Below are positions 36,475 through 56,319 of a stretch of 64,000 nucleotides of DNA, in pieces. Source of the stretch: Tubulanus polymorphus (Eukaryota > Animalia > Nemertea); NCBI RefSeq assembly GCF_964204645.1, contig NW_027437430.1, forward strand, positions 62,001 through 126,000, in the 5' to 3' direction. The notes under the pieces are model-generated. The model was not told the origin of the DNA and ran no database searches. It was given only the letters and a program-made list of their open reading frames with translations. A program made the position numbers and the translations under genes. Position 1 is the stretch's first letter. Each line of letters starts with the position of its first letter.

Positions 36475-37587
36475 ATGACTGCAGCTACCGTCAACACAGA
36501 TTGGGAATTCCACGCTCCGCAATTTTTCGATTTTGCCAACCCGGAAGAATACGAAAATGACGAGGCCGATGCTTGGTTTGGTACGTTGATATACATTTAC
36601 AATCATAGGTCCTTACTCTTCCATGGAAGACACACTGGTGGTACTAACCTTGGTTTGGTATATCTAGTTTTTAAGTTACCTTTGCCAGTTGTTTAATAAT
36701 TGTTACCCATTTCTGCTGTAAAAAATCATTATTAGGCCCTACATTCTGCACACTTTTTATACACTGCGCAGTTCAACCAAGCATATTTCTTCATTCATTA
36801 CGTAAAGAAATATATAGGTCTGAATTATCTGTAATCTATAGTAATAATAATACGTCACAGTATCAGATATCGGCATTACGACGGGTAGGGGGTCTGCATT
36901 ATATGATTTCATCCTGCATTTTTTTCAAAATAATGTTCTGTGTTTCTTCTTTCAGATGTACAAGAAACTACTGGTAACATCGATGATGAGTCTGGCTTTT
37001 GCGATGAAAGTCATCGAGAAGGACAAGGTAAACTGATAAAAACTGAACCTATGCAGAGGGGAGTGACTATAATTTAGGCTACATGGCGCGAGACCGATTA
37101 TCTATTATATTTCTAGAAAATCAATCGAAGAGGGGAGAAAAACGTCAAAGAACAACTGAATCAGTGTCGTCTATTCCTGAAGAGAGGTATTTCACAGTTT
37201 TTGACAATTAACCATTTGACTTACAGATTTTTTTTGTTGCACACCAAGATAATTTGCTACAAGCAACATTTATGACATTAAATGTGATGCACGGACATAA
37301 ACATCTTCACCCGTCAAGGGATTCGAACCCACTCTGCTAAAGCCGTTCCCCGAACCCCTTGACCTCACGAGTCGTTGGAGTCGTTACTAGCCGACCAGAA
37401 TCAGGTCGGGCCAATCACAGCGCTTGTTACAAACGACATTAGGCATCTATGGAATTTCCTGGTAAATGGACCAATCAGCGAATGCAGAAGTATTGTCGCG
37501 TGTTGATATATGACGTCATGCGCAAAAGCGCCAGTAATGAAATTGCGCGTCGTGAGGCCAGGGGGCTGGTGGAAGCGAGTTCGGGAG

Positions 37588-37659
<72 letters not shown>

Positions 37660-43849: not shown

Positions 43850-46800
43850 TCATTTATACATCATGACTTCTGTACTCTGATACATACACAAGTATGCATC
43901 ACACAAAACCCGACGTGCATACGAAGGCAGCTGGCGATCTTCTTTCAGAGACAATATTCGCTCATGGTTATCATCAGCCAACCATTCCGGAAGCTCTTGA
44001 CAAGGTTGAACTTCGGGAATATTATAGCCATGTTCTTGCCCTATAAGAACAAATGAGACACTTTATATGCATGTTACAATCTTTATTTGTATCGTCATAT
44101 GCTCAGTTATTTCTAGCCAGTCTTAGTTAATTTTTTCTTAACGCGGTATTTACCCATGCGATCAGCCATGCTGTCAAAGAAAACCCACGGTGCTTTTCTT
44201 CCTGGTCCACATTTAACAAACGCTACGTAGTGACTAGTCTCAATACAAACAACGGCAAAGAGCTCCATCATTTCATGGTCAATCTGTACATTACCATCCC
44301 CTAACAGTTCCTTCTGCTGGTTGAGAAAATCTTTGTAAGTTTCCGGTACTATTATTGGCCGAGAAATGTGTTTAGTACGTTCTGCATGCCGGCTGTGGGT
44401 CTGGAAAAAATAGCACAAGTCTAATAATTGAAATCTGAAAGAGAGTTCAATTATCCTGGTACATGAAAATTCTTACCAGATTGAAACATTTTCCACAAAA
44501 AGATGTCTTCCCTGAAAAGTGATTGTAACACTGCTTGCATTCACATTCAGCCAGACATCCACAGACTGCACACTCTCTAGGAGCTAGAATGAATGATAGA
44601 TGACTTTATTACTTAGAATGCCTATTCCATATGTCATAATACTAGAAACCAGTATCATGAAACTCACCATTCATCAGTATATCGGTGATATCCAAATACA
44701 AACTGGGGACAATACGCTGATACATTTTGTAATCCTTGCCAAATCTAGGCATCTGCAGTATCAAACAAGATGGTATCTGAAATATGAAAGTCATAATTTC
44801 TTAACTAAGCAAATTCGATGAATCACCTTTCATTGTAGAGCATTGCATAAAAACCTCTCATCATACCTCAGCTAATTTGATATCAGATTGCAGAAAAGAC
44901 AAATTCAGAAGTTGCTGTGTTGTAGGCAGGACAATTTTCTCATCTTTTTCAATGAATAACTGGTAGAAATACGATTCCTGTCCAGAGCTGGAAATAATCA
45001 CTAAAATCAGATACACACAAAGAAGAATGGCACATGTATCACCTTATTAAGTTATTCATCAGTACCTCAGTTTTATCAAAGGATCTGCTTTCAATGTCTG
45101 TTGCAATAGTGAATTGAGAAATTCTTCTGGATCTGCATGAGAGACACATACATACAAAACATGTTTCCTTAATTCATTAATTGAACGATATATTAAATTT
45201 GTCTGACTGCTCACCTTTTTCCTCACCCATCATGCCATTGACTGAACTGAGTTTGTCAAGAAATGTCCTCAGTTTTAACAATTTGTCGGCTCTTACATAG
45301 AAAAACCTATAATACGTAATGTAACGGTGTAAAGAGAGAGACTAAGCTGGTGAGGTCACCTGTTGATCAGAAAATGAACTATTAGTACACTCCCATTAGT
45401 AATGGGGAATGAATAATGGTGTGGATTTCATCTGTTCCACTCAGTGAAGACATCAATTTTCCGTATCAAGCGAAATATTGGCAACTGAATCTATCGGTGT
45501 AAAAACTCACTTTCTTAAAGGATTCACAATCGACTCTCGGAGAACCTTTTGTATTTCTTCATACTCGTCTAAATCAGTAGCCTTCTTTGGTCGATGAAGA
45601 ATTGTATCAAATACTTGCGTAAATGCAAACATACTAAACAATGTTGCATCCAAGTAACACGAGTTATGGTGACCCTGTAGACCTTTATTCTTCCCACAAA
45701 TATTTGGCAGGTTTTTTTCAACTGTTGGTGGTGAAACATTACCCGGTATGTCTGGACTTTCTTCACTACCAAAGGCTGTAATAAATTTTATATTCTCAAT
45801 TTTACACATAGCAGTAAATGACACCTGAGACAGCAAACAGAAGGCGTAATTCCTTACTTGGTTCTCCAGTTCCATTCAGGTTTTTTGTTTCCTGGAAGCG
45901 TGGGTCCTTGCGCACTTTATTTAGATAAACAAAAAATCCTTTCTTCGAAGGACAGCTAAAAATACGTCGGCCATTGAATGTTCCATCTAAACATGCAGCG
46001 CATTCTTCTTCCTATCAAAGACATTCAATTCAGTTCACTAATCCTAATACATATATAAGTCATGTAAATAGCGACATTATCAAACACAACTCACCATTTC
46101 TAGTCCAGCCACTAGTTTATTACGATCCTTCGCCTCTGGTAAACAACCGATCCATCGAATAACCCCGTAACGCGGAGGATTCTCTAAAACCTCGACCACT
46201 GATCCAATCTCTAAGTCCGCAGTATTCGAATTCAGTGATGTATTTTTTGGGGCCGATGAATCTGAATTTTTACGCGATCGCTCTGATCTACCGTTATAAA
46301 CGCTGTTACCATTATTTGTGACGTAGCTGCCCGCTACAGAATGTTCAGAACGGTTTCTATTAGTCGACGTATTATTACCATTCGACTTTTTATCTGTACT
46401 TTCACTGCTACAACTACTACTGCTACTACAAGAAGGTTCTACAATTTGCGGTACGTCTTTTAACAGCTTCGGTTTGTAATGTTCTGAATTTGGGGGATAA
46501 ACCGGACTTGTATTCTCGGGACTGGAAGAATCTGTGAGATCACTCAAATTGCTAATTCCACTAATATTACTAATGTTACTTGGACTTTGCGATATTCCTG
46601 AAAGTCTACACATTCCATTTTCATGTTCCAACGTGTCGCTGCAGGTGTCTGAAAAATATACACATAAACATAAGTAAATGTAAATATAATTTTTCACTGT
46701 AATGATGAGCCCAATACAAACAAGACGCGAGAAATATCTTTTTACTGGTACTTACCATGGTTCATATCTATGTATGAAGGTCTAACTGGTTCAATATCAG

Positions 46801-49800
46801 CTGTCACAGTGTGAACATTTTTGGAATTGGAATTTTTCAGAACTGACGGTCGAGTGGCATTGGGCGATAATGGAGAACGTAGCATCGGTTCATTTGTCTC
46901 TGGTAATCCGTCATTACTAAACGAAATCGCCTTTTTCTTTTCAGTTTTGATATGTCCACTTCGTGTAGGTGGCAAACCTTTACTGTTACTGCTGCTGCTG
47001 CTGGAAGACTGAGCAGAACTAGTTTTACTATGAGAATCAAGTGAACTAGCGCGTGTTTGTTGCAATGACCTTTTCTGATCTCGCAGCACATCAGTTTCCT
47101 CTTTGCCCGTCTGTTTGCTAGCCATTTTAACAGCTAACGTAGGACTCATAGCATTAGTGTCATTATGATCTGAAAATGGATACCATTTAGAAGTAGTCTT
47201 GTAAAAATTAATAACTAAATTGCATAGACTTCATTTTTAGAAAAAAACACCCAAAATCGGAAGAACAGGTAGCATATATGTTTCTAAAGTTTCTGATTTA
47301 TATAAATCGGGGGTGGGTCTAAAAAATTGGAAAGCAGGTCCAAAAGAAGTGGGAGAGCATTCCTTGGATGAAGCAGCCATGCCGATAGATCCCCTTGGTG
47401 CTAGTAAAGAAATATACACCTGAAAAGATGCAATTTCTTAAACGATAAGTGTCATATTTACAGGTTATCATGATCTTTGTCTTGACAAAAAGGGCAACTT
47501 AATGGGAAGGTAGAGAACCAGACCTCCGAACGTACTCAGAAGTATTATGCCTGAAACATCAGAACGATATGCTAGCTGAACCAATGTGCTTCTTCTGTCC
47601 AATTGTGGATATTTAATTCTGCTACCAGCTTAAGATTGGTATTGGTCTAATTACAATCTCAGCCTTTGACTATCAAATACGTATATTTACAGGTTTTTTC
47701 AGATTTTTGCCGTCTGTCATTCGGCTTGTGTACAGAAGAATAAGTATTAAATCCACTGGTGCCCGAATCAGAACTAGAGCTTTTGTCATCACGTTTCAGT
47801 TTTGGACGCGTTCGAGGTCTCTCAAAATCTGAATGAAAAAAATATCATAAATATCTTCTGTTAAGAATAAATACATGTATTAGAAACACCTCAGTAAAAT
47901 GGAAGACTTTTTCCACTAAGTTTTCTTTTTAATGCTCAGAGGCTTGTGTGAAGCTCATATTACACGTACAATGAATGATTATCAACAGGTTTAACTCAGT
48001 AAATTGTCACCAGGTATAACTATAATTTTTCCATACCACAGAAAGAAATACTGTAGTCCATGAAGGAAATAAACAATGCGAACCTACTAGTGATCTGAAT
48101 AAGGCTCTGTGGGTTGAGGGACATACATAGGAAGTTGTAGAGTAAGACTACTCAACTTTCTATATATGTTCCTCAACCCACAGAGCCCTATTCAGATCAT
48201 TGGTAGGTTCACAGTGTTTATTTCCCTCATGCAGGAGGGAAGTCAGAGCACTCTACCACCACTAACATTGGAACGCGTTGATGAGAACAGTGACATGACT
48301 TCAAACCCATATGCCGTGACACTTCAATGAAAGTGAAAGTATATTTTTTAAATTTTATGAGCATTTTGAAAATCTATAGCACAAAACTATGTATAATGTA
48401 CGTCACTCGGGGTGGACTTTGAGCGCTATATTTGACATTCAAACCTGATAAAGGCTCGTCAGTCAACTGTTGATCCTTCATATTACCAGTTTCTTCCTCT
48501 CCAATAACAACATAATCATCAATGCTTTGTGGTCCTATAGCGTAGGTACTGGTGCTTGTATCGAAAGTCTTGTCTTCAAAATGTGTCGAGGTAAAAGAAT
48601 CAGGAGACCTATAGCTTCTAGATAGATAATTCGTGATCTTTCTATTATTCATATCTTCATCTTGGTGTCTGCTTCTATGTTTCATATCTTCATCTTGGTG
48701 TTTGTTTCCATGTTTCATATCTTCATCTTGGTGTTTGTTTCTATATTTCATATCTTCATCTTGGTGTTTGTTTCTATGTTTCATATCTTCATCTTGGTGT
48801 TTGTTTCTATGTTTCATATCTTCATCTTGGTGTTTGTTTCTATGTTTCATATCTTCATCTTGGTGTTTGTTTCTATGTTTCATATCTTCATCTTGGTGTT
48901 TGTTTCTATGTTTCATATCTTCATCTTGGTGTTTGTTTCTATGTTTCATATCTTCATCTTGGTGTTTGTTTCTATGTTTCATATCTTCATCTTGGTGTTT
49001 GTTTCTATATTTCATATCTTCATCTCGGTGTCCATCAGCTTTTCCATCCAAATGATCCTGACTTCCATTGTATTCTGAATGTCCATCCATCTTGTTTTTA
49101 CTGCCTGATGAATTGCTGGATCTTTTAGTCAAATGAATGCTAGGCGAAATGTCTTCAGATCTTCTACTCTGATGTTTGTCACCGAAGTGATCATGTTGAA
49201 ATCTAAGATCCGATTTGTCACTGTCACAATTCGAGTCATACTGATTTCCTATTCCATTTTGTTTCAAATCCATGGTTAGAAATTTCACAACTTTTTCAAA
49301 GGAGTTACTCATAAACATAAACACAAATCCGATATAGATAATGAATTTCAGGTATAAATAGAGAATATTCCAAACAGTAAGTACGAGAAATGAATTCCAG
49401 TTCCAAAAGATTTTGATAATCCCAGCTACAATATTACAAAGTAATATGTAGACACGCCAGAAAGGACTTATAAAGAAGTAGTCCACAATTAACATAGCCA
49501 GCACTGAGTGTTTCACCACTGACGACTGAATAACTGTCATGTGAATATTCGCCGTATTCCTAGTGTACAGGCAAATAATGCAAGTGAAAATCAATACGGG
49601 GTAAAACCCAAGGTTATTTATGTTCAAAGGCTGCATTATCTAAGTATTCACAATGAATATTATTAAACGCAGTCATTCAGGATTATTATGTGGGTTGAAC
49701 AAGACCCATTTCATGAACTGATACTTTTCATCAACCACGGTAAGCTAATAACACATAGAATCAAGATATATACGTTACCGATGAGAGGCATTTTCACATG

Positions 49801-52800
49801 AGTGGGTGGATTTAAAAATTCCTCTTCTTTCATTAATCCCATGATTGGTACGAGCGATGCATGATCAGACTTAGTTTTAAACAGTTGTTGATCTTTGTAT
49901 TTTCCGGTTCCCGACCCGACCGGGTTGTCCTAAAATATCGAAATGATAAATACCCAAGTCTTATTCATTTCCATAAATTACATGATATACATTTATTCAG
50001 ATATAACAGATATATGGAACAGATAGAACAGATATATATTAAAAAAATATTTAAAAAACATTCATTTGGAAAAACCTTCTATTTCCCTGATTCTCAACTC
50101 GGTGAAATAATTTCAGTCCTAACAGATTGGGTTTACTGTATGAAAACTTGTATACTTACAAATTCGACACCGACTGTGACTTCATCGGGTACATCAGGCA
50201 GGTATCCGATCCAGCGGACTGTACCGTATTCCGGGCCTCTATCGCTCAGCCAAACAACGCGTTCATTTTCAACTAACTGATGCTGTCCAGTTGACCGCAT
50301 TGCCATCGCCATAATTGGTGATGTAGCCGATGGTGGAGTTGCTATTGATGTAGTTGAACTGATACTAGAATACTGAGGAGTAGAAGGTGATGGTGTATAC
50401 ACAGGAGGAGGTACCGATGGCACAGCTGTATGATGATGATGATGGTGACTGTGCTGGTTTTGTCCGGGTCCACGGAAACGCCGGATTTTTGAGATATTCA
50501 CGAATATTCCACTGTCCGGTTCACACATGAAATAACGTTGACTCGACAATGTTCCATCAGTCGTTCCTCTACCTTTATTTTCCTGAAATGAGAAATTCAA
50601 AATTACTGTGTAACTCAAGGGTTTTTTTCATAGATAGGGGATGACCCATTCCGCGGTATCGCTGCCTTAGCTTTGAAAGATAGAAAACCACTCGCAATTA
50701 TTCAATCTATTAAATGTTGTTTATTCAATGTCTTACTGGAAATGATATTATTGCAGAGAGAATGAATACACGCTGAGTATCTGCGTTATGCTACTGATAA
50801 TAATTCAGGCAGGAATTGATTAATCAATGAAACACTACTGGATCATCGAAATAACAAGAATAGATTGAAACATCCAATAGTCCGTTCCCTGACAAAAATG
50901 TTATCACTCCAGTTGGGGGCTGGGCATTAATTGATAAGTTTTGTTTGCAGAAATATTGGCAGCCACAATAATCCAACCTCCATCTTAATTGATAAATGTA
51001 TCGACTGTTGACTTTCTTGCCTGGCATTTTCCTATCGTTTTTGCCCGTTCGCCACATTTTAGTAGCCATAGTGAACGTTATAAGTATTACACTCCTTTAA
51101 CTGATCAGGTGATAAAACCCAGATCAGAGCATTTGCCAGTTGTATTAGGCGAGGCAATTAATTACCAGAAAACAAATGTGTTAGAAACAGCAGTAAGAAT
51201 TTTACGAAATACTCAATCACTGTAATTACGAAGATTATTGAAGGGAATGAACATACCGCTACGCGAATACCATTGCACCAAACTATCACCCTGCTGGATT
51301 CTAATCTAAACTGTAGAATGGCATCAACAAAAATGTCATGTCAGACTTTGATGAAATCGTGTTTCTATCCCAGATTCATGTTTACATTTATGCTCCTAAG
51401 AAAGGTTAACCATTTCCAATACAGCAAAATCATCAAAAGAAGGCTGATAATACAGTACCAGCTGTCAGTATGGATGAGAGTTGAAATTTAACCTTGATGG
51501 GAATAAATGCCTATAAACTCTTCTTCAGTTAAGTTTCCTGGATACAATAAAAAAAGAATATATCACCATTATCCGAATATCCGAATAAGACGTGGATTTC
51601 GTTCCATTGCGACGCTAAGACTTTATAACGTTACCATAAAGAATCTACCAAAGATGACAAGAAAAGTTTTTTCAAAGAAAATAATTGTTTTGATGAGTGT
51701 ATGCGAGTACTCTACAGAATAAATGAATCTATTCAACTCTACGAGATATGACGAGGTAGAAATTTGGATAAGAAGAGCTGAATGAAGCTAGAATCGACAT
51801 TCCACAGATAAAGCTGCAGCTGTGCCAGAATAATTCCAACAAACAGTTCGTTCTCATCAGTGTGAGAAATATGGAAAAATACAACAAAGATTAAATGTTA
51901 CAAAGACTCTGACATGACTGTCACAACCCAGTCACAACCCAGTACGGTACAGCATTTTCTCCTACAACAACAAAGGTGTTATAATGAATAACCTATTCAA
52001 TCAAAGATCATATTTTGGAAGGTACTTGGAAGGTCTGATGAAGAATTTTGGGATGGAGAAATCTCAATCAGAGTGTACAAATACCAAAAATACCACAAGG
52101 TATGGCATAAGGGGGTTTGAATTTGTGCTGCAACTCGGTAGAATACTGTCATCTGATATTAATCAGCTGCCGGAAAAACATCTTCAGTGCGTATTCTTCC
52201 GCCTGGATTTCGTAACAGAATGAAAACAAGCTAAAGCAAACAACAAGCACGCTGCGCAACAGAACATCCTACATTATACTCTCCGCTCCTACTTAGGTAG
52301 GTACTTCAACCTTTCCTTTACTCATGAATTCATATCCTTTGACCTCAGCGCGAGGATGTAATAAATAAAACATTATGACCTCTCTACCTCGCTTTTCACT
52401 CTACCTTGAAGGTAAATACAGTCTGTTTATATGGACATATATTAAAGGTTGCCCGTGCTGATGTTGGAATGATACTTCCAGCTGGTGGAAATGCTGAGAA
52501 ATCATACCGCAATGGATTCCACCGACGCAAACTTTTTGACGTCAGATGCAAGGTGCATTTCAGAATTCTATTGGGTGAGAATGATTCAACCTTAGTGAAT
52601 TCTGCCAGATGTTCATTTTAATACTGTGTGGCCTACCGTAAAGCACATAGCTAGCCTTTATAGGAAGATGGCAATACGTCTAATAAAGTATCTATGACAT
52701 TATGTATGTTACTGAGCCTTCACCTCAAATATTATTCCAGAAAATATATATTTATATATATATACAACAGATATAGATTTTAAAAACTTATTAGTTTATA

Positions 52801-55800
52801 GCTCATCCTACATTTTCCATAAAATCCTTCCTGATATAAACTCTGATCATGTACGGAATCCCACAGCTCTGCTGTGAATAGGGACTACTCAGTGGGTTGA
52901 TGAGATATCATGTAGCCGAGACATTTCAAATAAAAGGTCGACGAAAGATTTCTAAATAGACTTTAAGACATTTAAGCGAATGTGACAGTTAATTTGGTGA
53001 GAGTATCCGGTATGCCTGGTCAGCTCAACGGTGGCTTATCACCGCATTAGTTCTGTCAACAAACCCTCGTCAGGACTTTCTCTTAATGGAATTTGCGATG
53101 GTTGAGACAGCATTCATACAGCATTTGATTTTGCACTTCAAAGAGAAGGCAAAACTAGCAATTAATCATTAATCATCATTGGCATATTCCTTTGAGCACT
53201 CCAGTCAATGTGCTACCTTAACTAATATCAATATTTCTAGCTAACTGCGGTTTGTCATTCTTGTAAAAAATTGAAAATATTGATGCCACTATTGATGCTA
53301 TTGTGTTATAGAGGATCCCGATGATGAAATCGAACAAAACCTTCATAAACCACAAACATTATCAGCAAACTGAGTCAGAGAAAACCACAAAGGTATGGTA
53401 AGGATCAGACCCAGACATCATTAGTAATATATGATATATTTTTAACCTGGGCCAGATTTGGCCCGTGCCCAATTAGGCCGCGACCGTCCGTTCACAGTGG
53501 TGCCAAATGGGGCCGTGTGTGTTTGATAGACTAAATTATGCCCGACAAAACCGTCGGACCAGGCCTGTGCCACATTTATTGGTAGAATTATTCTGTGTGT
53601 ATGCAACTTGGTTCTGGAAGTGACTTTTCCGCGCTTCTAATTACATCTATTTGATAGCATTTATGAGTTGAGTGATTTATAGGTGAACGCATTCTCTTAT
53701 TACGCATGGGTCAAATTTGACTCGGGCCTGGTGCAGGCCAGTTTGACCCGGGCCAAATAGTTTCCGTGTGATCGTGATAGCATACATTCATTAGCACGTA
53801 AGCAAGATAATTAACACGCCAATCAGGTCTCGTAAGTAATTATCGAAGAACCATAGGGATTGAAGAAATAATTAAAAACAAATTATCTTATCAAACTGTC
53901 TTGGTTTGATATGAAAGCTAGGGACCTTTTAATCTAAGAGAAATCATCTTTGACTTACGCTTAATCAATAACGAGTTCAGAAATGTTCAGCAAGTACTAG
54001 TCATTACATTTCCTAACTGGAAGCATTATATAATGAACATCATCTGTAGGAATATTCCTAATTATAAACTGTACAAAGATTCAATTAGTAAAGTAAGAAG
54101 CGCATCTGATACCCAGATGATTCCTACCAATCTAAAGCTGTAATTCTACCATCCTTTACTGAGCCTGGCCATAATCCACAGCCACTCATATATTGAATAT
54201 ATGACAACTGGAAATTTGCCATAGTTCGATGTTTTTAGCAGAAACAGAATCAAGTCATTGCCTGAACCGCTGTAGTTAACGCCTACACACAGACAGGCCT
54301 ACATCTTTACATATCAATGACACGATAATTTTTAAACCGGTTGTCGTATCATGGAAACCATGCCATAATTCGAAATTGGTGATCGGCATTAAACAAACAA
54401 TATGGCTGTTTGATGAAAACAGATGATTTTGAGATGTACGTAATTTGTATGCAGAGGAGATAGATTACGCTTTAATGACTGCAAATCAAATCTCATTGCA
54501 TCCGTAATGATAAATAGCCACATGAATATTTGAACACAACCAGCAGAGGAGACTCTTAAAATAGAGGCTTATGGCAAAAATCATGATATATGTCTAAATC
54601 AGAAAACTTTGATTCTTATGATAAAAGTTGTTTTAGGTGGAGTGCTCGGTGCTAAAAGCAATTATTTTCAGCTGCTTGGGGAAAAACTAATGATAGACTT
54701 AAACTCAAAATAAATTGGGGAATAGTGAAAATTTATCGTTAAATTCATTATAAATCAGTTTAATAATTTCTTAGGTGTAATCCACACTAGCGAATGTTGC
54801 TTCCATGCTGGTTTTACAATGAAGCGATGAACAAGAATTCTGTACAACAAAACGCCAGCAGTAAACTATGTTATCCTTGGCACACACAGATCTGTAAGTT
54901 ATATACAGCCTATACCTAAGTAACGAATGTTCAGCACCGAAGCTTATACCTTCCTCGTATTTATATATACCTGACGTACTGCTGTATAGGAACGGTACAT
55001 AAAGGTATTTGAGAAATTGTGTTACTGAATAAAATGTATGATGCACATAGCATATTTGCATGTACAACATATGTAACTAAAAATACAATCAAACTCTGAA
55101 TTAAATCATGCACTTAGCCAAGGTTATACCCAGCAATATCAAATTATGTATTGGCTTTTGAATATCTTATTTTCATCGGTAAGATCTTCCGAAATAGCAT
55201 AATCAGGGGTAACCCCGAGAACTTAAACTCATCACAATCTACTTCTGAATTTGATGTCAGACTTTCAATATTTTTTGATATGGTACCACACTAGCCATAA
55301 AACTATTAGCAAAGCAAAAACTGTTCCCGTTATCATAAACCATCGCTTAAACTGTTGATGAAATGATAGATGGTACAGGATTCAAAAACAATTCAAGCAT
55401 CATGCAGCATGGAAATCATAAGCTATAGGCTACAGCCATATAATTAAGAAATAATGTTTTTGAAACAGAAAGGTTCTACACCTTAAAACTCACCAATAGT
55501 TCAACACCAAACCATAAACCCCTTATTCCTGTCAAACATCCTTTGTATCGAATGATGCCCGAAGCGCGATCTGGTAGGTTTGGGTAATGTAATATTGAAA
55601 CAAAATCCGAAACCAGTAAATTCAGTCCTTCGTCGAGCCATTGCTGGTCATCAAACACTTTCACTCTATCTGCACATGTACTGATAGATGCCAATAATAA
55701 ATACTGTTCAAATGTTATCTTCGACACATCGTTTGGTGGACAACTTAATATAAGATTATCAAAATCTAATGACGCGAAGTATGAAAATCCGATCTTCTCG

Positions 55801-55967
55801 TGTTTCTTGGTTTGTTTATCCTCGTAATCTTTCCATAACGTTCCCGGTAGTACGGTTATTTCATCGCCGGCTTTTTGTCGTGATAAAAATCCAGTTTTTT
55901 CCTTCTTGTTCGCGATGTGTTCTTTTTTAAGAATATAACGAGGTCTCTGTTGTGTGTCTGATGCCAT
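43850..55967 (-). CDS. CYLD: CYLD deubiquitinase (three CAP-Gly domains + USP domain with zinc-binding insert)
   Basis: Exons ~55967-55494, 50582-50160, 49929-49779, 47828-47691, 47169-46756, 46648-46095, 46011-45858, 45775-45511, then short exons to the stop at 43850. CAP-Gly motifs GIIRYKG..WFGVEL, GTVRWIG..VGVEF, GVIRWIG..AGLEM; catalytic motifs [35 protein letters not shown]. Confidence 0.95.
48059..48231. repeat. Long fold-back inverted repeat (~85-bp arms) in a CYLD intron
   Basis: Left arm CATGAAGGAAATAAACAATGCGAACCTAC...GTGGGTTGAGG is the reverse complement of the right arm with about 10 mismatches; loop of a few nt near 48145. Confidence 0.9.
48374..49636 (-). CDS. Intronic 420-aa ORF in CYLD (hydrophobic N-terminus + 11-aa repeats); candidate alternative first exon
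   Basis: Same strand as CYLD, between exons 49929-49779 and 47828-47691. Internal phase-1 donors (TG|GTAATA at 48486, CAG|GTTTGA at 48444) match the phase-1 acceptor at 47828. Confidence 0.55.
   Translation of the reverse strand: MQPLNINNLGFYPVLIFTCIICLYTRNTANIHMTVIQSSVVKHSVLAMLIVDYFFISPFWRVYILLCNIVAGIIKIFWNWNSFLVLTVWNILYLYLKFIIYIGFVFMFMSNSFEKVVKFLTMDLKQNGIGNQYDSNCDSDKSDLRFQHDHFGDKHQSRRSEDISPSIHLTKRSSNSSGSKNKMDGHSEYNGSQDHLDGKADGHRDEDMKYRNKHQDEDMKHRNKHQDEDMKHRNKHQDEDMKHRNKHQDEDMKHRNKHQDEDMKHRNKHQDEDMKHRNKHQDEDMKHRNKHQDEDMKYRNKHQDEDMKHGNKHQDEDMKHRSRHQDEDMNNRKITNYLSRSYRSPDSFTSTHFEDKTFDTSTSTYAIGPQSIDDYVVIGEEETGNMKDQQLTDEPLSGLNVKYSAQSPPRVTYIIHSFVL
48648..49030 (-). repeat. 33-nt tandem repeat, ~12 copies ([11 protein letters not shown])
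   Basis: Unit CTTGGTGTTTGTTTCTATGTTTCATATCTTCAT on + repeated near-perfectly. Confidence 0.97.
53445..53775. mobile_element. Degenerate non-autonomous DNA-transposon-like element in CYLD intron 1
   Basis: GC-rich island of repeated GGGCCA.ATTTG.CCC palindromic units with CGTTCACA...TGTGATCG ends. Confidence 0.45.
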
Positions 55968-56319
55968 TTTGAGGGTAAACTATGAACAGCCATAAGATTA
56001 ATATCCTGATTAAAGTAAAGCGGTGTACTAATAGTGAGTGTGGGAGTGAGTTCGGCTATCAGACTGAGTGCTTTATCAGAGTTCTACATCTGAATGAAGT
56101 GCAAGACGTGTGTCGTAGACAATCCTCTGCCTGGTTCGTGTGTAGCTCCTTACTTTTTTATAGTTAATTAACACCGGTCTAATTACTCCTGACACTAATC
56201 AATTATTTGTAAGCAGTAAGTGAAAATAATATATCTAAACACGATAGTACACACCTTTACACCACTGCATCAACGTGAGCACTCATCCGTAGACAACATC
56301 AACATCATCAGCTGCTGCC

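What the first reader, a model, noticed from the sequence alone, without database searches (positions are those of the whole stretch)
48374..49636. Hidden intronic exon that could encode a membrane-anchored CYLD isoform
Seen: a 420-codon sense-strand ORF inside the intron after the exon completing CAP-Gly 2. Its first ~120 aa hold several hydrophobic stretches (e.g. [40 protein letters not shown]), followed by a charged region and ~12 [11 protein letters not shown] repeats. Two phase-1 donors (48486, 48444) fit the phase-1 acceptor at 47828. Established: CYLD is known as a soluble K63/M1 deubiquitinase whose CAP-Gly 1 and 2 bind microtubules. Inference: an internal promoter could yield TM + repeats + CAP-Gly 3 + USP, moving the enzyme from microtubules to a membrane. 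I know of no described isoform like this.
Basis: partly seen in the sequence, partly recalled or inferred. Interest (0 to 1): 0.82.

Follow-up and report, generated by a model that had tools for sequence, protein, structure and literature searches.

The report
Alternative hydrophobic first exon of CYLD
In the ribbon worm Tubulanus polymorphus, an exon inside an intron of the deubiquitinase gene CYLD is transcribed and spliced to give an isoform that swaps the two microtubule-binding domains for a greasy, possibly membrane-spanning head and a charged repeat; this isoform is already a public gene model, but nobody has described or tested it.

Summary
A 420-codon sense ORF (48374-49636, minus strand) lies in the CYLD intron between exon 49779-49929 and exon 47691-47828. 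It contains 12 units of a 33-bp minisatellite encoding [11 protein letters not shown].

Spliced RNA contigs from two independent studies carry the predicted junction 48487->47828 and cover the ORF up to 49519 or 49528, but not its first ATG.

The organism is Tubulanus polymorphus (Nemertea). RefSeq already models the proposed isoforms:
- X3 (XP_074645067.1, 1155 aa) and X1 (1169 aa) start at ATG 49495, which is Met48 of the ORF. They use donors 48487 and 48445 and continue into CAP-Gly 3 and the USP domain.
- X2 (1168 aa) is canonical CYLD and skips the exon.

Its first ~62-80 residues are strongly hydrophobic and predicted helical, and one segment passes membrane-insertion thresholds. Membrane anchoring remains untested.

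The exon has no detectable relative in 252 CYLD-family proteins, in the protein databases searched or elsewhere in its own genome, and it looks young. No close relative was available to test conservation.

I found no paper describing a transmembrane CYLD isoform. The nearest analogues are the USP19 and USP30 membrane anchors. Interest is moderate.

The parts
48487..49528 (-). Alternative first exon as seen in RNA (isoform X3). The upper edge is the end of an RNA contig, not a mapped 5' end.
   Evidence: RNA contigs lie at 48979-49528 (run X2) and at 49058-49219 and 49364-49519 (run X5). The joint 48487->47828 appears in both. P0001 residues 1-336 map to 49495-48488 at 100% identity.
48445..48486 (-). 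Extension of the exon to the second donor (isoform X1). It adds [14 protein letters not shown].
   Evidence: P0151 residues 1-350 map to 49495-48446. GT lies at 48444-48443.
49493..49495 (-). It is the first ATG downstream of the RNA edge and is in frame.
49310..49495 (-). Coding for the hydrophobic head, residues 1-62 of P0001 ([62 protein letters not shown]).
   Evidence: hydropathy peaks of 1.6-2.1. T at codon position 2 is 55%, against 35% and 37% at positions 1 and 3; helix 3-82, with pLDDT above 90 for residues 11-60.
49031..49309 (-). Charged, Ser/Asp/His-rich region predicted to be disordered.
   Evidence: codon log-ratio +0.23 in the ORF frame and negative in the other frames; pLDDT below 50 for residues 85-123.
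48639..49031 (-). 33-bp minisatellite, 12 units encoding [11 protein letters not shown].
   Evidence: seven consecutive identical units; unique to this locus.
49529..49636 (-). It is open but lies outside the RNA contigs.
   Evidence: no run-X5 contig lies in 49537-49733, and run X2 has only a low-depth contig there; the CDS starts at 49495.
49524..49529 (-). TCAGTC, an initiator-like motif at the RNA contig edge. Candidate transcription start.
   Evidence: the motif occurs about once per 1160 nt per strand in the window. Reading it as an initiator is inference from arthropod promoters.
47691..47828 (-). First shared downstream exon ([16 protein letters not shown]...), with a phase-1 acceptor AG at 47830-47829.
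   Evidence: joints 48487->47828 and 47691->47169..
49779..49929 (-). Canonical exon 3, which completes CAP-Gly 2. Its phase-1 donor GT is at 49778-49777, and it joins 47828 in isoform X2.
   Evidence: joint 50159->49928..
50160..50582 (-). Canonical exon 2 (end of CAP-Gly 1, His run, start of CAP-Gly 2).
55494..55967 (-). Canonical first coding exon (MASDTQQ..., start of CAP-Gly 1).
43853..47169 (-). Shared 3' part of the gene: Ser-rich linker, CAP-Gly 3, and the USP domain with its B-box. Exons include 46756-47169, 46094-46648, 45858-46010 and 45509-45775.
   Evidence: joints. E 5.9e-117 to human CYLD USP, PDB 2VHF..

Best explanation
The stretch is an alternative first exon of the Tubulanus polymorphus CYLD gene, driven by a start site inside intron 3.

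Proposed mechanism:
- Transcription begins at about 49527-49530.
- The first AUG (49495) opens a frame that runs 336 or 350 codons to one of two phase-1 donors (48487 or 48445).
- The frame is then spliced to the shared exon at 47828.

The product is 1155 or 1169 aa. It lacks CAP-Gly 1 and 2. In their place it carries:
- a hydrophobic helical head of about 62-80 residues,
- a disordered charged region,
- twelve [11 protein letters not shown] repeats.

The common Ser-rich linker, CAP-Gly 3 and the USP catalytic domain follow.

Shown: the exon, its 3' junction, the frame, and the public models.

Inferred: the internal promoter, use of Met 49495, and that the head tethers the enzyme to a membrane with the catalytic domain in the cytosol. 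That tether would be either one anchor helix at about residues 37-62 or a hairpin.

The exon appears to be a young, lineage-specific sequence.
For: RNA:
- Canonical CT..AC joints match the gene model in runs X2 and X5, which come from two studies. They include 48487->47828.
- Unspliced RNA contigs cover 48979-49528 and 49364-49519. Neither run shows a listed joint into the exon's upper edge.
- The deeper run reaches further 5' (49528 against 49519), as expected at a transcript end rather than at a fixed acceptor.

Public models:
- P0001 and P0151 (XP_074645067.1 and XP_074645065.1) start at 49495, and P0152 skips the exon.
- All three map at 100% identity on the window.

Start site and start codon:
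- TCAGTC lies at the contig edge.
- The first ATG after the edge is in frame with G at -3, and there is no out-of-frame ATG before 49257.

Coding character:
- The exon is stop-free in the one frame that fits the downstream exon.
- The hydrophobic part has T-at-position-2 periodicity.
- Open intron windows are rare (0.55%) and never this hydrophobic.

Hydropathy and helix prediction.

The catalytic domain is intact: E 5.9e-117 to 2VHF, with the Cys and His boxes aligned.
Against: - No read-level 5' end data exist. Contigs cannot show starts, and my one reads call is spent.
- The exon is symmetric (phase 1 at both ends), and two AG sites (exon start 49518 or 49533) would join it in frame to exon 3. 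An internal-exon form is therefore not excluded.
- The canonical skip junction 49779->47828 was also not listed in the contigs, so absence of a joint in that table is weak evidence.
The first hydrophobic stretch carries D, R, N, P and K.
- The codon log-ratio of the hydrophobic part is intron-like (-0.35). However, the training set held no membrane proteins and one out-of-frame piece.
- The repeat units differ only by non-synonymous changes (0 synonymous, 11 non-synonymous).
- The single SNP seen in the exon is non-synonymous, while four in shared exons are synonymous. This points to little constraint.
- No relative of the exon was found anywhere.
Confidence: 0.6

Rival explanations
1. The transcript is real, but the hydrophobic head is not a functional anchor. 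Two versions are possible. In one, translation effectively starts at the strong-context ATG 49273 (ACCATGG), just after the hydrophobic part, and gives a soluble CYLD without CAP-Gly 1-2. In the other, the RNA is the by-product of a young cryptic intronic promoter and its protein is of no consequence.
For: - ATG 49273 has the best Kozak context and lies right after the hydrophobic part.
- The exon has no relatives.
- The repeat array is very young and its variants are all non-synonymous.
- The only exon SNP is non-synonymous.
- The codon score of the hydrophobic part is intron-like.
Against: - A scanning ribosome meets ATG 49495 first, with G at -3.
- The 76 hydrophobic codons are stop-free with T2 periodicity, unlike any open intron window.
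- RNA contigs with this exon were assembled in two independent data sets, while the skip form was not.
Confidence: 0.22
2. The exon is an internal, in-frame cassette exon. Exon 3 (donor 49779, phase 1) would join an acceptor giving exon start 49518 or 49533 (both phase 1). The result would be a full-length CYLD of about 1510 aa with a 344-349-residue insert carrying hydrophobic helices between CAP-Gly 2 and CAP-Gly 3. The RefSeq X1 and X3 models would then be 5'-truncated.
For: - The exon is symmetric: 1032 nt from 49518 to 48487.
- AG dinucleotides lie at 49520-19 and 49535-34 in the right phase.
- The run-X5 contig ends at 49519, exactly where an exon starting at 49518 would share one letter with exon 3.
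- The ORF stays open above the RNA edge.
Against: - No joint from 49779 to about 495xx is listed in either RNA run. The run-X2 contig runs past both 49518 and 49525, to 49528, without loose letters.
- RefSeq, built on RNA alignments, starts X1 and X3 in the exon and gives no model of about 1510 aa. The longest isoform is 1169 aa.
- An odd number of membrane helices in mid-protein would put the catalytic domain on the wrong side of the membrane.
Confidence: 0.12
3. The ORF is a chance open frame in an AT-rich intron, kept open by a frame-neutral minisatellite. It is neither transcribed as an exon nor coding.
For: - A third of the ORF is a 33-bp repeat that is also open in two frames of the opposite strand.
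- There is no Pfam match.
Against: - The spliced junction 48487->47828 appears in two RNA studies.
- RefSeq coding models exist.
- About 206 non-repeat codons have no stop, whereas only 0.55% of 76-codon intron windows are open.
Confidence: 0.02

Closest known systems
Canonical CYLD (human CYLD, USP domain PDB 2VHF; T. polymorphus isoform X2, XP 'CYLD-like', P0152)
   Same: Same gene. The last 818 residues are identical to isoform X2: Ser-rich linker, CAP-Gly 3, and a USP domain with B-box and Cys/His boxes.
   Different: CAP-Gly 1 and 2 (350 residues) are replaced by a hydrophobic head, a charged region and 12 tandem repeats that no other CYLD-family protein shows.
Mouse short CYLD (sCYLD, skipping of exons 7 and 8; PMC2118471, PMC10320722)
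   Same: A natural isoform that changes the non-catalytic part of CYLD and so its partners, while leaving the USP domain intact.
   Different: sCYLD is an internal deletion made from the same promoter. It keeps CAP-Gly 1-2 and gains no new sequence. The 2023 CYLD review lists three protein isoforms, and the word 'transmembrane' occurs nowhere in it.
USP19 ER-anchored isoform (PMC4755399)
   Same: A USP-family deubiquitinase with two isoforms, one cytoplasmic and one with a transmembrane segment chosen by an alternative exon. The catalytic domain faces the cytosol.
   Different: The USP19 anchor is a C-terminal tail anchor from an alternative last exon. Here the candidate anchor is N-terminal, from an alternative first exon, and unproven.
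USP30 (mitochondrial outer membrane; PMC4755399)
   Same: A short N-terminal segment, a hydrophobic helix, basic residues after it, and then a cytosolic USP domain. This comparison is from my own knowledge.
   Different: USP30's anchor is constitutive and conserved, and USP30 is a different USP subfamily. There is no sequence similarity to this exon.

Membership tests
CYLD family (USP-type deubiquitinase) | USP catalytic domain of the CYLD type, with Cys box, His box and B-box insertion | tested here: met
   P0001 residues 740-1155 against human CYLD 2VHF, E 5.9e-117, aligned end to end, including [14 protein letters not shown] and the Cys-rich insert; the USP-box exon finds 502 relatives.
CYLD family (USP-type deubiquitinase) | Three CAP-Gly domains ahead of the USP domain | tested here: not met
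   the canonical isoform P0152 has 3 CAP-Gly stretches, while the alternative isoform P0001 has only one (residues 669-738). The gene is a CYLD, but this isoform lacks the two microtubule-binding domains.
Alternative first exon from an internal promoter | The exon is present in mature RNA and spliced to shared downstream exons | tested here: met
   joint 48487->47828 with CT..AC ends in runs X2 and X5; both donors are used in public models.
Alternative first exon from an internal promoter | Transcripts begin at the exon and are not joined to upstream exons | tested here: inconclusive
   contig edges at 49528 and 49519, and no listed joint into the exon. Contigs cannot show starts, however; the public CDS starts at 49495. 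TCAGTC at 49529-49524.
Alternative first exon from an internal promoter | Capped 5' ends or promoter activity at the site | not testable with these tools
   Needs CAGE, 5' RACE or long-read cDNA.
Membrane-anchored deubiquitinase (USP19/USP30-like) | A hydrophobic segment long and hydrophobic enough to span a bilayer | tested here: met
   19-residue windows up to KD 2.13. The first stretch is marginal, with sums of 4.3-5.7.
Membrane-anchored deubiquitinase (USP19/USP30-like) | Predicted helix followed by a cytosolic catalytic domain | tested here: inconclusive
   the single-sequence AlphaFold2 model gives one helix over residues 3-82 (pLDDT above 90 for 11-60) and disorder after residue 85. Topology is not resolved, and no dedicated topology predictor was available.
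Membrane-anchored deubiquitinase (USP19/USP30-like) | Conservation of the anchor in relatives, or experimental membrane association | not testable with these tools
   No close relative is in the databases: the best non-self CYLD is about 60% identical in the USP part. There is no match to the exon.

The most novel reading that the evidence does not exclude
A ribbon worm makes, perhaps as its main adult form, a CYLD deubiquitinase whose two microtubule-binding CAP-Gly domains are replaced by a newly evolved membrane anchor and an expanding minisatellite-encoded charged spacer. An internal promoter drives this form. It would be the first membrane-tethered CYLD, and a case of a de novo first exon relocating a conserved signalling enzyme.
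Probability: 0.3. Interest if true: 0.55.

Novelty: new variant of a known kind. Interest (0 to 1): 0.4.

Why it matters
CYLD is treated as a soluble K63/M1 deubiquitinase whose location is set by its CAP-Gly domains. In USP19 and USP30, a membrane anchor decides which substrates the enzyme sees.

A natural CYLD isoform that trades microtubule binding for a membrane tether would show that the same relocation has been reached in another USP lineage. It would also offer a clean example of a young, lineage-specific exon, with a still-expanding coding minisatellite, being grafted onto an old gene.

The finding is limited to one species. It is already present as an unnamed model in RefSeq, and it rests on prediction for the membrane part.

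Tried and rejected
- Word-index protein searches with the exon (343 aa) and its non-repeat N-part (161 aa) gave no hit. They are length-limited, so they could not see the 1155-aa models.
- Pfam on the ORF gave nothing.
- The ESM Atlas feature search of residues 1-160 gave no usable hit.
- A local phmmer of the exon against 252 CYLD-family proteins gave nothing below E 0.16.
- A six-frame search of the worm's own genome with the N-part found only the locus and its duplicate contig. I therefore dropped origin from a paralogue, a transposon family or a mitochondrial insert. The minisatellite is likewise unique to the locus.
- The codon log-likelihood test is weak. It was trained on a few soluble proteins of the window, one piece was out of frame, and it is biased against membrane segments. 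I do not lean on it.
- The AlphaFold2 single-sequence model gave one 80-residue helix and cannot settle hairpin against single span.
- The look-up of encoding contigs on P0001 returned nothing, because records of the window's own genome are left out.
- I considered that the RefSeq models might hide a frame-shifting inclusion through AG 49527-26 (exon start 49525). The run-X2 contig runs 3 letters past that point without matching exon 3, so I rate this low.
- The depth figures are per contig, and I did not use them to rank isoforms.
- I built no joined exon model of my own. Exons were searched by reference one at a time, and the only spliced proteins used are those the databases returned (P0001, P0151, P0152).

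Full report
**What is there**

The window carries a CYLD gene on the minus strand. The 420-codon ORF at 48374-49636 is real. It lies in the intron between exon 49779-49929, which completes CAP-Gly 2, and exon 47691-47828.

About a third of the ORF is a 33-bp minisatellite: 11.9 copies, 96% matches, at 48639-49031. It reads as twelve [11 protein letters not shown] units. Only one of the three sense frames of the unit is open, while two frames of the opposite strand are also open.

ORF residues 55-110 give 19-residue Kyte-Doolittle peaks of 1.7-2.1. Pfam finds nothing in the ORF. The flanking ORFs carry CAP-Gly.

**Is it more than chance?**

Yes. Only 0.55% of 76-codon windows in sense-strand introns of this gene are open. 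None has a mean hydropathy above 0.21, whereas the hydrophobic part scores 1.23. That part has T at 55% of second codon positions, against 35% and 37% at positions 1 and 3. The other two frames carry 6 and 3 stops. The charged part and the repeat have exon-like codon scores in the ORF frame only (this is a weak test, see Tried and rejected).

**RNA evidence**

I laid four public runs of the same species on 45400-51300.

- Runs X2 and X5 come from different studies and behave as RNA. Their contigs carry canonical CT..AC joints, which are GT..AG on the minus strand.
- The joints are 50159->49928, 48487->47828, 47691->47169, 46756->46648, 46094->46010 and 45858->45775.
- Runs X3 and X4 lie across introns and behave as DNA.
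- Unspliced RNA contigs cover 48979-49528 (X2) and 49058-49219 and 49364-49519 (X5).
- Above 49537, X5 has nothing and X2 has only a low-depth contig.
- No joint into the upper edge of the exon is listed. The canonical skip joint 49779->47828 is not listed either.
- Contigs cannot prove starts or absence.

**Identity and public models**

A search of 1.84 billion representatives with the USP-box exon (window:45510-45773:-) returned P0001, 100% identical and 1155 aa. It runs through the hydrophobic part and the repeats, reads ...GEEET|DFERPRT across the 48487->47828 junction, and continues into CAP-Gly 3 and the USP domain.

| Protein | RefSeq record | Length | Structure |
|---|---|---|---|
| P0001 | XP_074645067.1 / XP_074661745.1, 'uncharacterized protein LOC141914449 isoform X3' | 1155 aa | Starts at 49495, donor 48487 |
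| P0151 | isoform X1 | 1169 aa | Same start, second donor 48445 |
| P0152 | 'ubiquitin carboxyl-terminal hydrolase CYLD-like isoform X2' | 1168 aa | Canonical protein, reads ...KMPLI|DFERP, skips the exon |

The organism is Tubulanus polymorphus, a palaeonemertean. All three proteins map at 100% identity on the window.

Pfam sees three CAP-Gly stretches in X2 and one in X3. The USP part aligns end to end with human CYLD 2VHF at E 5.9e-117.

The exon is therefore not hidden.

**The 5' edge**

The donor of exon 3 is phase 1. Two AG sites (exon start 49518 or 49533) would join the exon in frame, so an internal cassette form is formally possible.

Four observations argue against it:
- The deeper RNA run reaches further up (49528) than the shallower one (49519), and it ends without loose letters.
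- RefSeq has no model of about 1510 aa.
- The public CDS starts at Met48 rather than Met33. This puts the modelled 5' end below 49538.
- A TCAGTC motif sits at 49529-49524, at the contig edge. The motif occurs about once per 1160 nt per strand in the window. Reading it as an initiator is my inference from arthropod promoters.

The first ATG below the edge is 49495, in frame, with G at -3. The next well-placed ATG (49273, ACCATGG) lies just after the hydrophobic part. I put an internal start site at about 0.7-0.75.

**The membrane claim**

The head is hydrophobic. A single-sequence AlphaFold2 model folds it as one helix over residues 3-82, with pLDDT above 90 for residues 11-60 and disorder after residue 85.

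The first stretch carries D, R, N, P and K. Two arrangements would leave the catalytic domain in the cytosol, as in USP30 and USP19:
- one anchor helix at about residues 37-62, followed by K68, K71 and K77;
- a hairpin.

This is inference only.

**Age and constraint**

The exon has no match in any of these searches:
- 252 CYLD-family proteins;
- the word-index searches;
- the ESM Atlas;
- elsewhere in its own genome.

The minisatellite is unique to the locus. Seven repeat units in a row are identical, and all 11 unit differences are non-synonymous.

Against the reference, the X5 individual shows four synonymous changes in shared CYLD exons and one non-synonymous change (S>L, 49146) in this exon. 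The numbers are tiny, but they fit a young, weakly constrained sequence.

The best non-self CYLD is only about 60% identical in the USP part. No close relative was therefore available, and conservation could not be tested.

**Literature**

A 2023 CYLD review lists three protein isoforms: 956 aa, 953 aa and mouse sCYLD of 770 aa. It never uses the word 'transmembrane'. Searches for a transmembrane or alternative-first-exon CYLD found nothing relevant. [quoted passage not shown]

**Verdict**

- Membrane anchoring is plausible but untested.
- It is a new, undescribed variant of a known kind, namely a USP relocated by an alternative exon. It is seen in one species and is of moderate interest.

Exons were searched by reference, and the spliced proteins used are database records.

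Noticed in passing
window 48059-48231 (minus-strand intron 47829-48486): A single-copy hairpin with 79-nt arms, 89% complementary and 15 nt apart. The RNA run X2 reads C instead of T (+ strand) at 48128 and 48192, one site in each arm. The DNA-like runs X3 and X4 from the same sample read only T. On the transcribed strand this is A>G, the signature of ADAR A-to-I editing of an intronic double-stranded RNA.
   Followed up: partly
window = G000:C13:62001-126000; copy at G000:C3:3533281-3537543 (L001 against L002): The locus is present twice in the assembly, identical over all 4263 bases compared. RefSeq accordingly has two gene ids (LOC141914449 and LOC141901615) with identical proteins. This is probably a redundant contig rather than a real duplication.
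   Followed up: partly
window 37302-37594: A dispersed repeat of about 300 bp with at least 38 copies at 86-98% identity on many contigs of the genome. It sits next to a (TA)n-type microsatellite that reads IYIYIY in ORF lists. It looks like a SINE-type element.
   Followed up: no
window 50060-50124 (intron 49930-50159): Many contigs of all four runs end or branch here with loose ends, and depth is very high (tables 2, 5c, 7). This suggests a short high-copy repeat inside intron 2 of CYLD.
   Followed up: no
window 56062-56067 (minus strand): The same TCAGTC motif that lies at the edge of the alternative exon also lies about 95 nt upstream of the canonical CYLD start codon at 55967. It may mark the canonical transcription start. 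This was not checked with reads.
   Followed up: no
window 49271-49273 (minus strand): An in-frame ATG in a strong ACCATGG context lies directly after the hydrophobic part. No out-of-frame ATG lies between 49495 and 49257. This could give a second, soluble product by leaky scanning.
   Followed up: partly
window 50430-50448 (minus strand, exon 2): A run of six histidines (HSHHHHHH) lies in the linker between CAP-Gly 1 and CAP-Gly 2 of the canonical protein.
   Followed up: no
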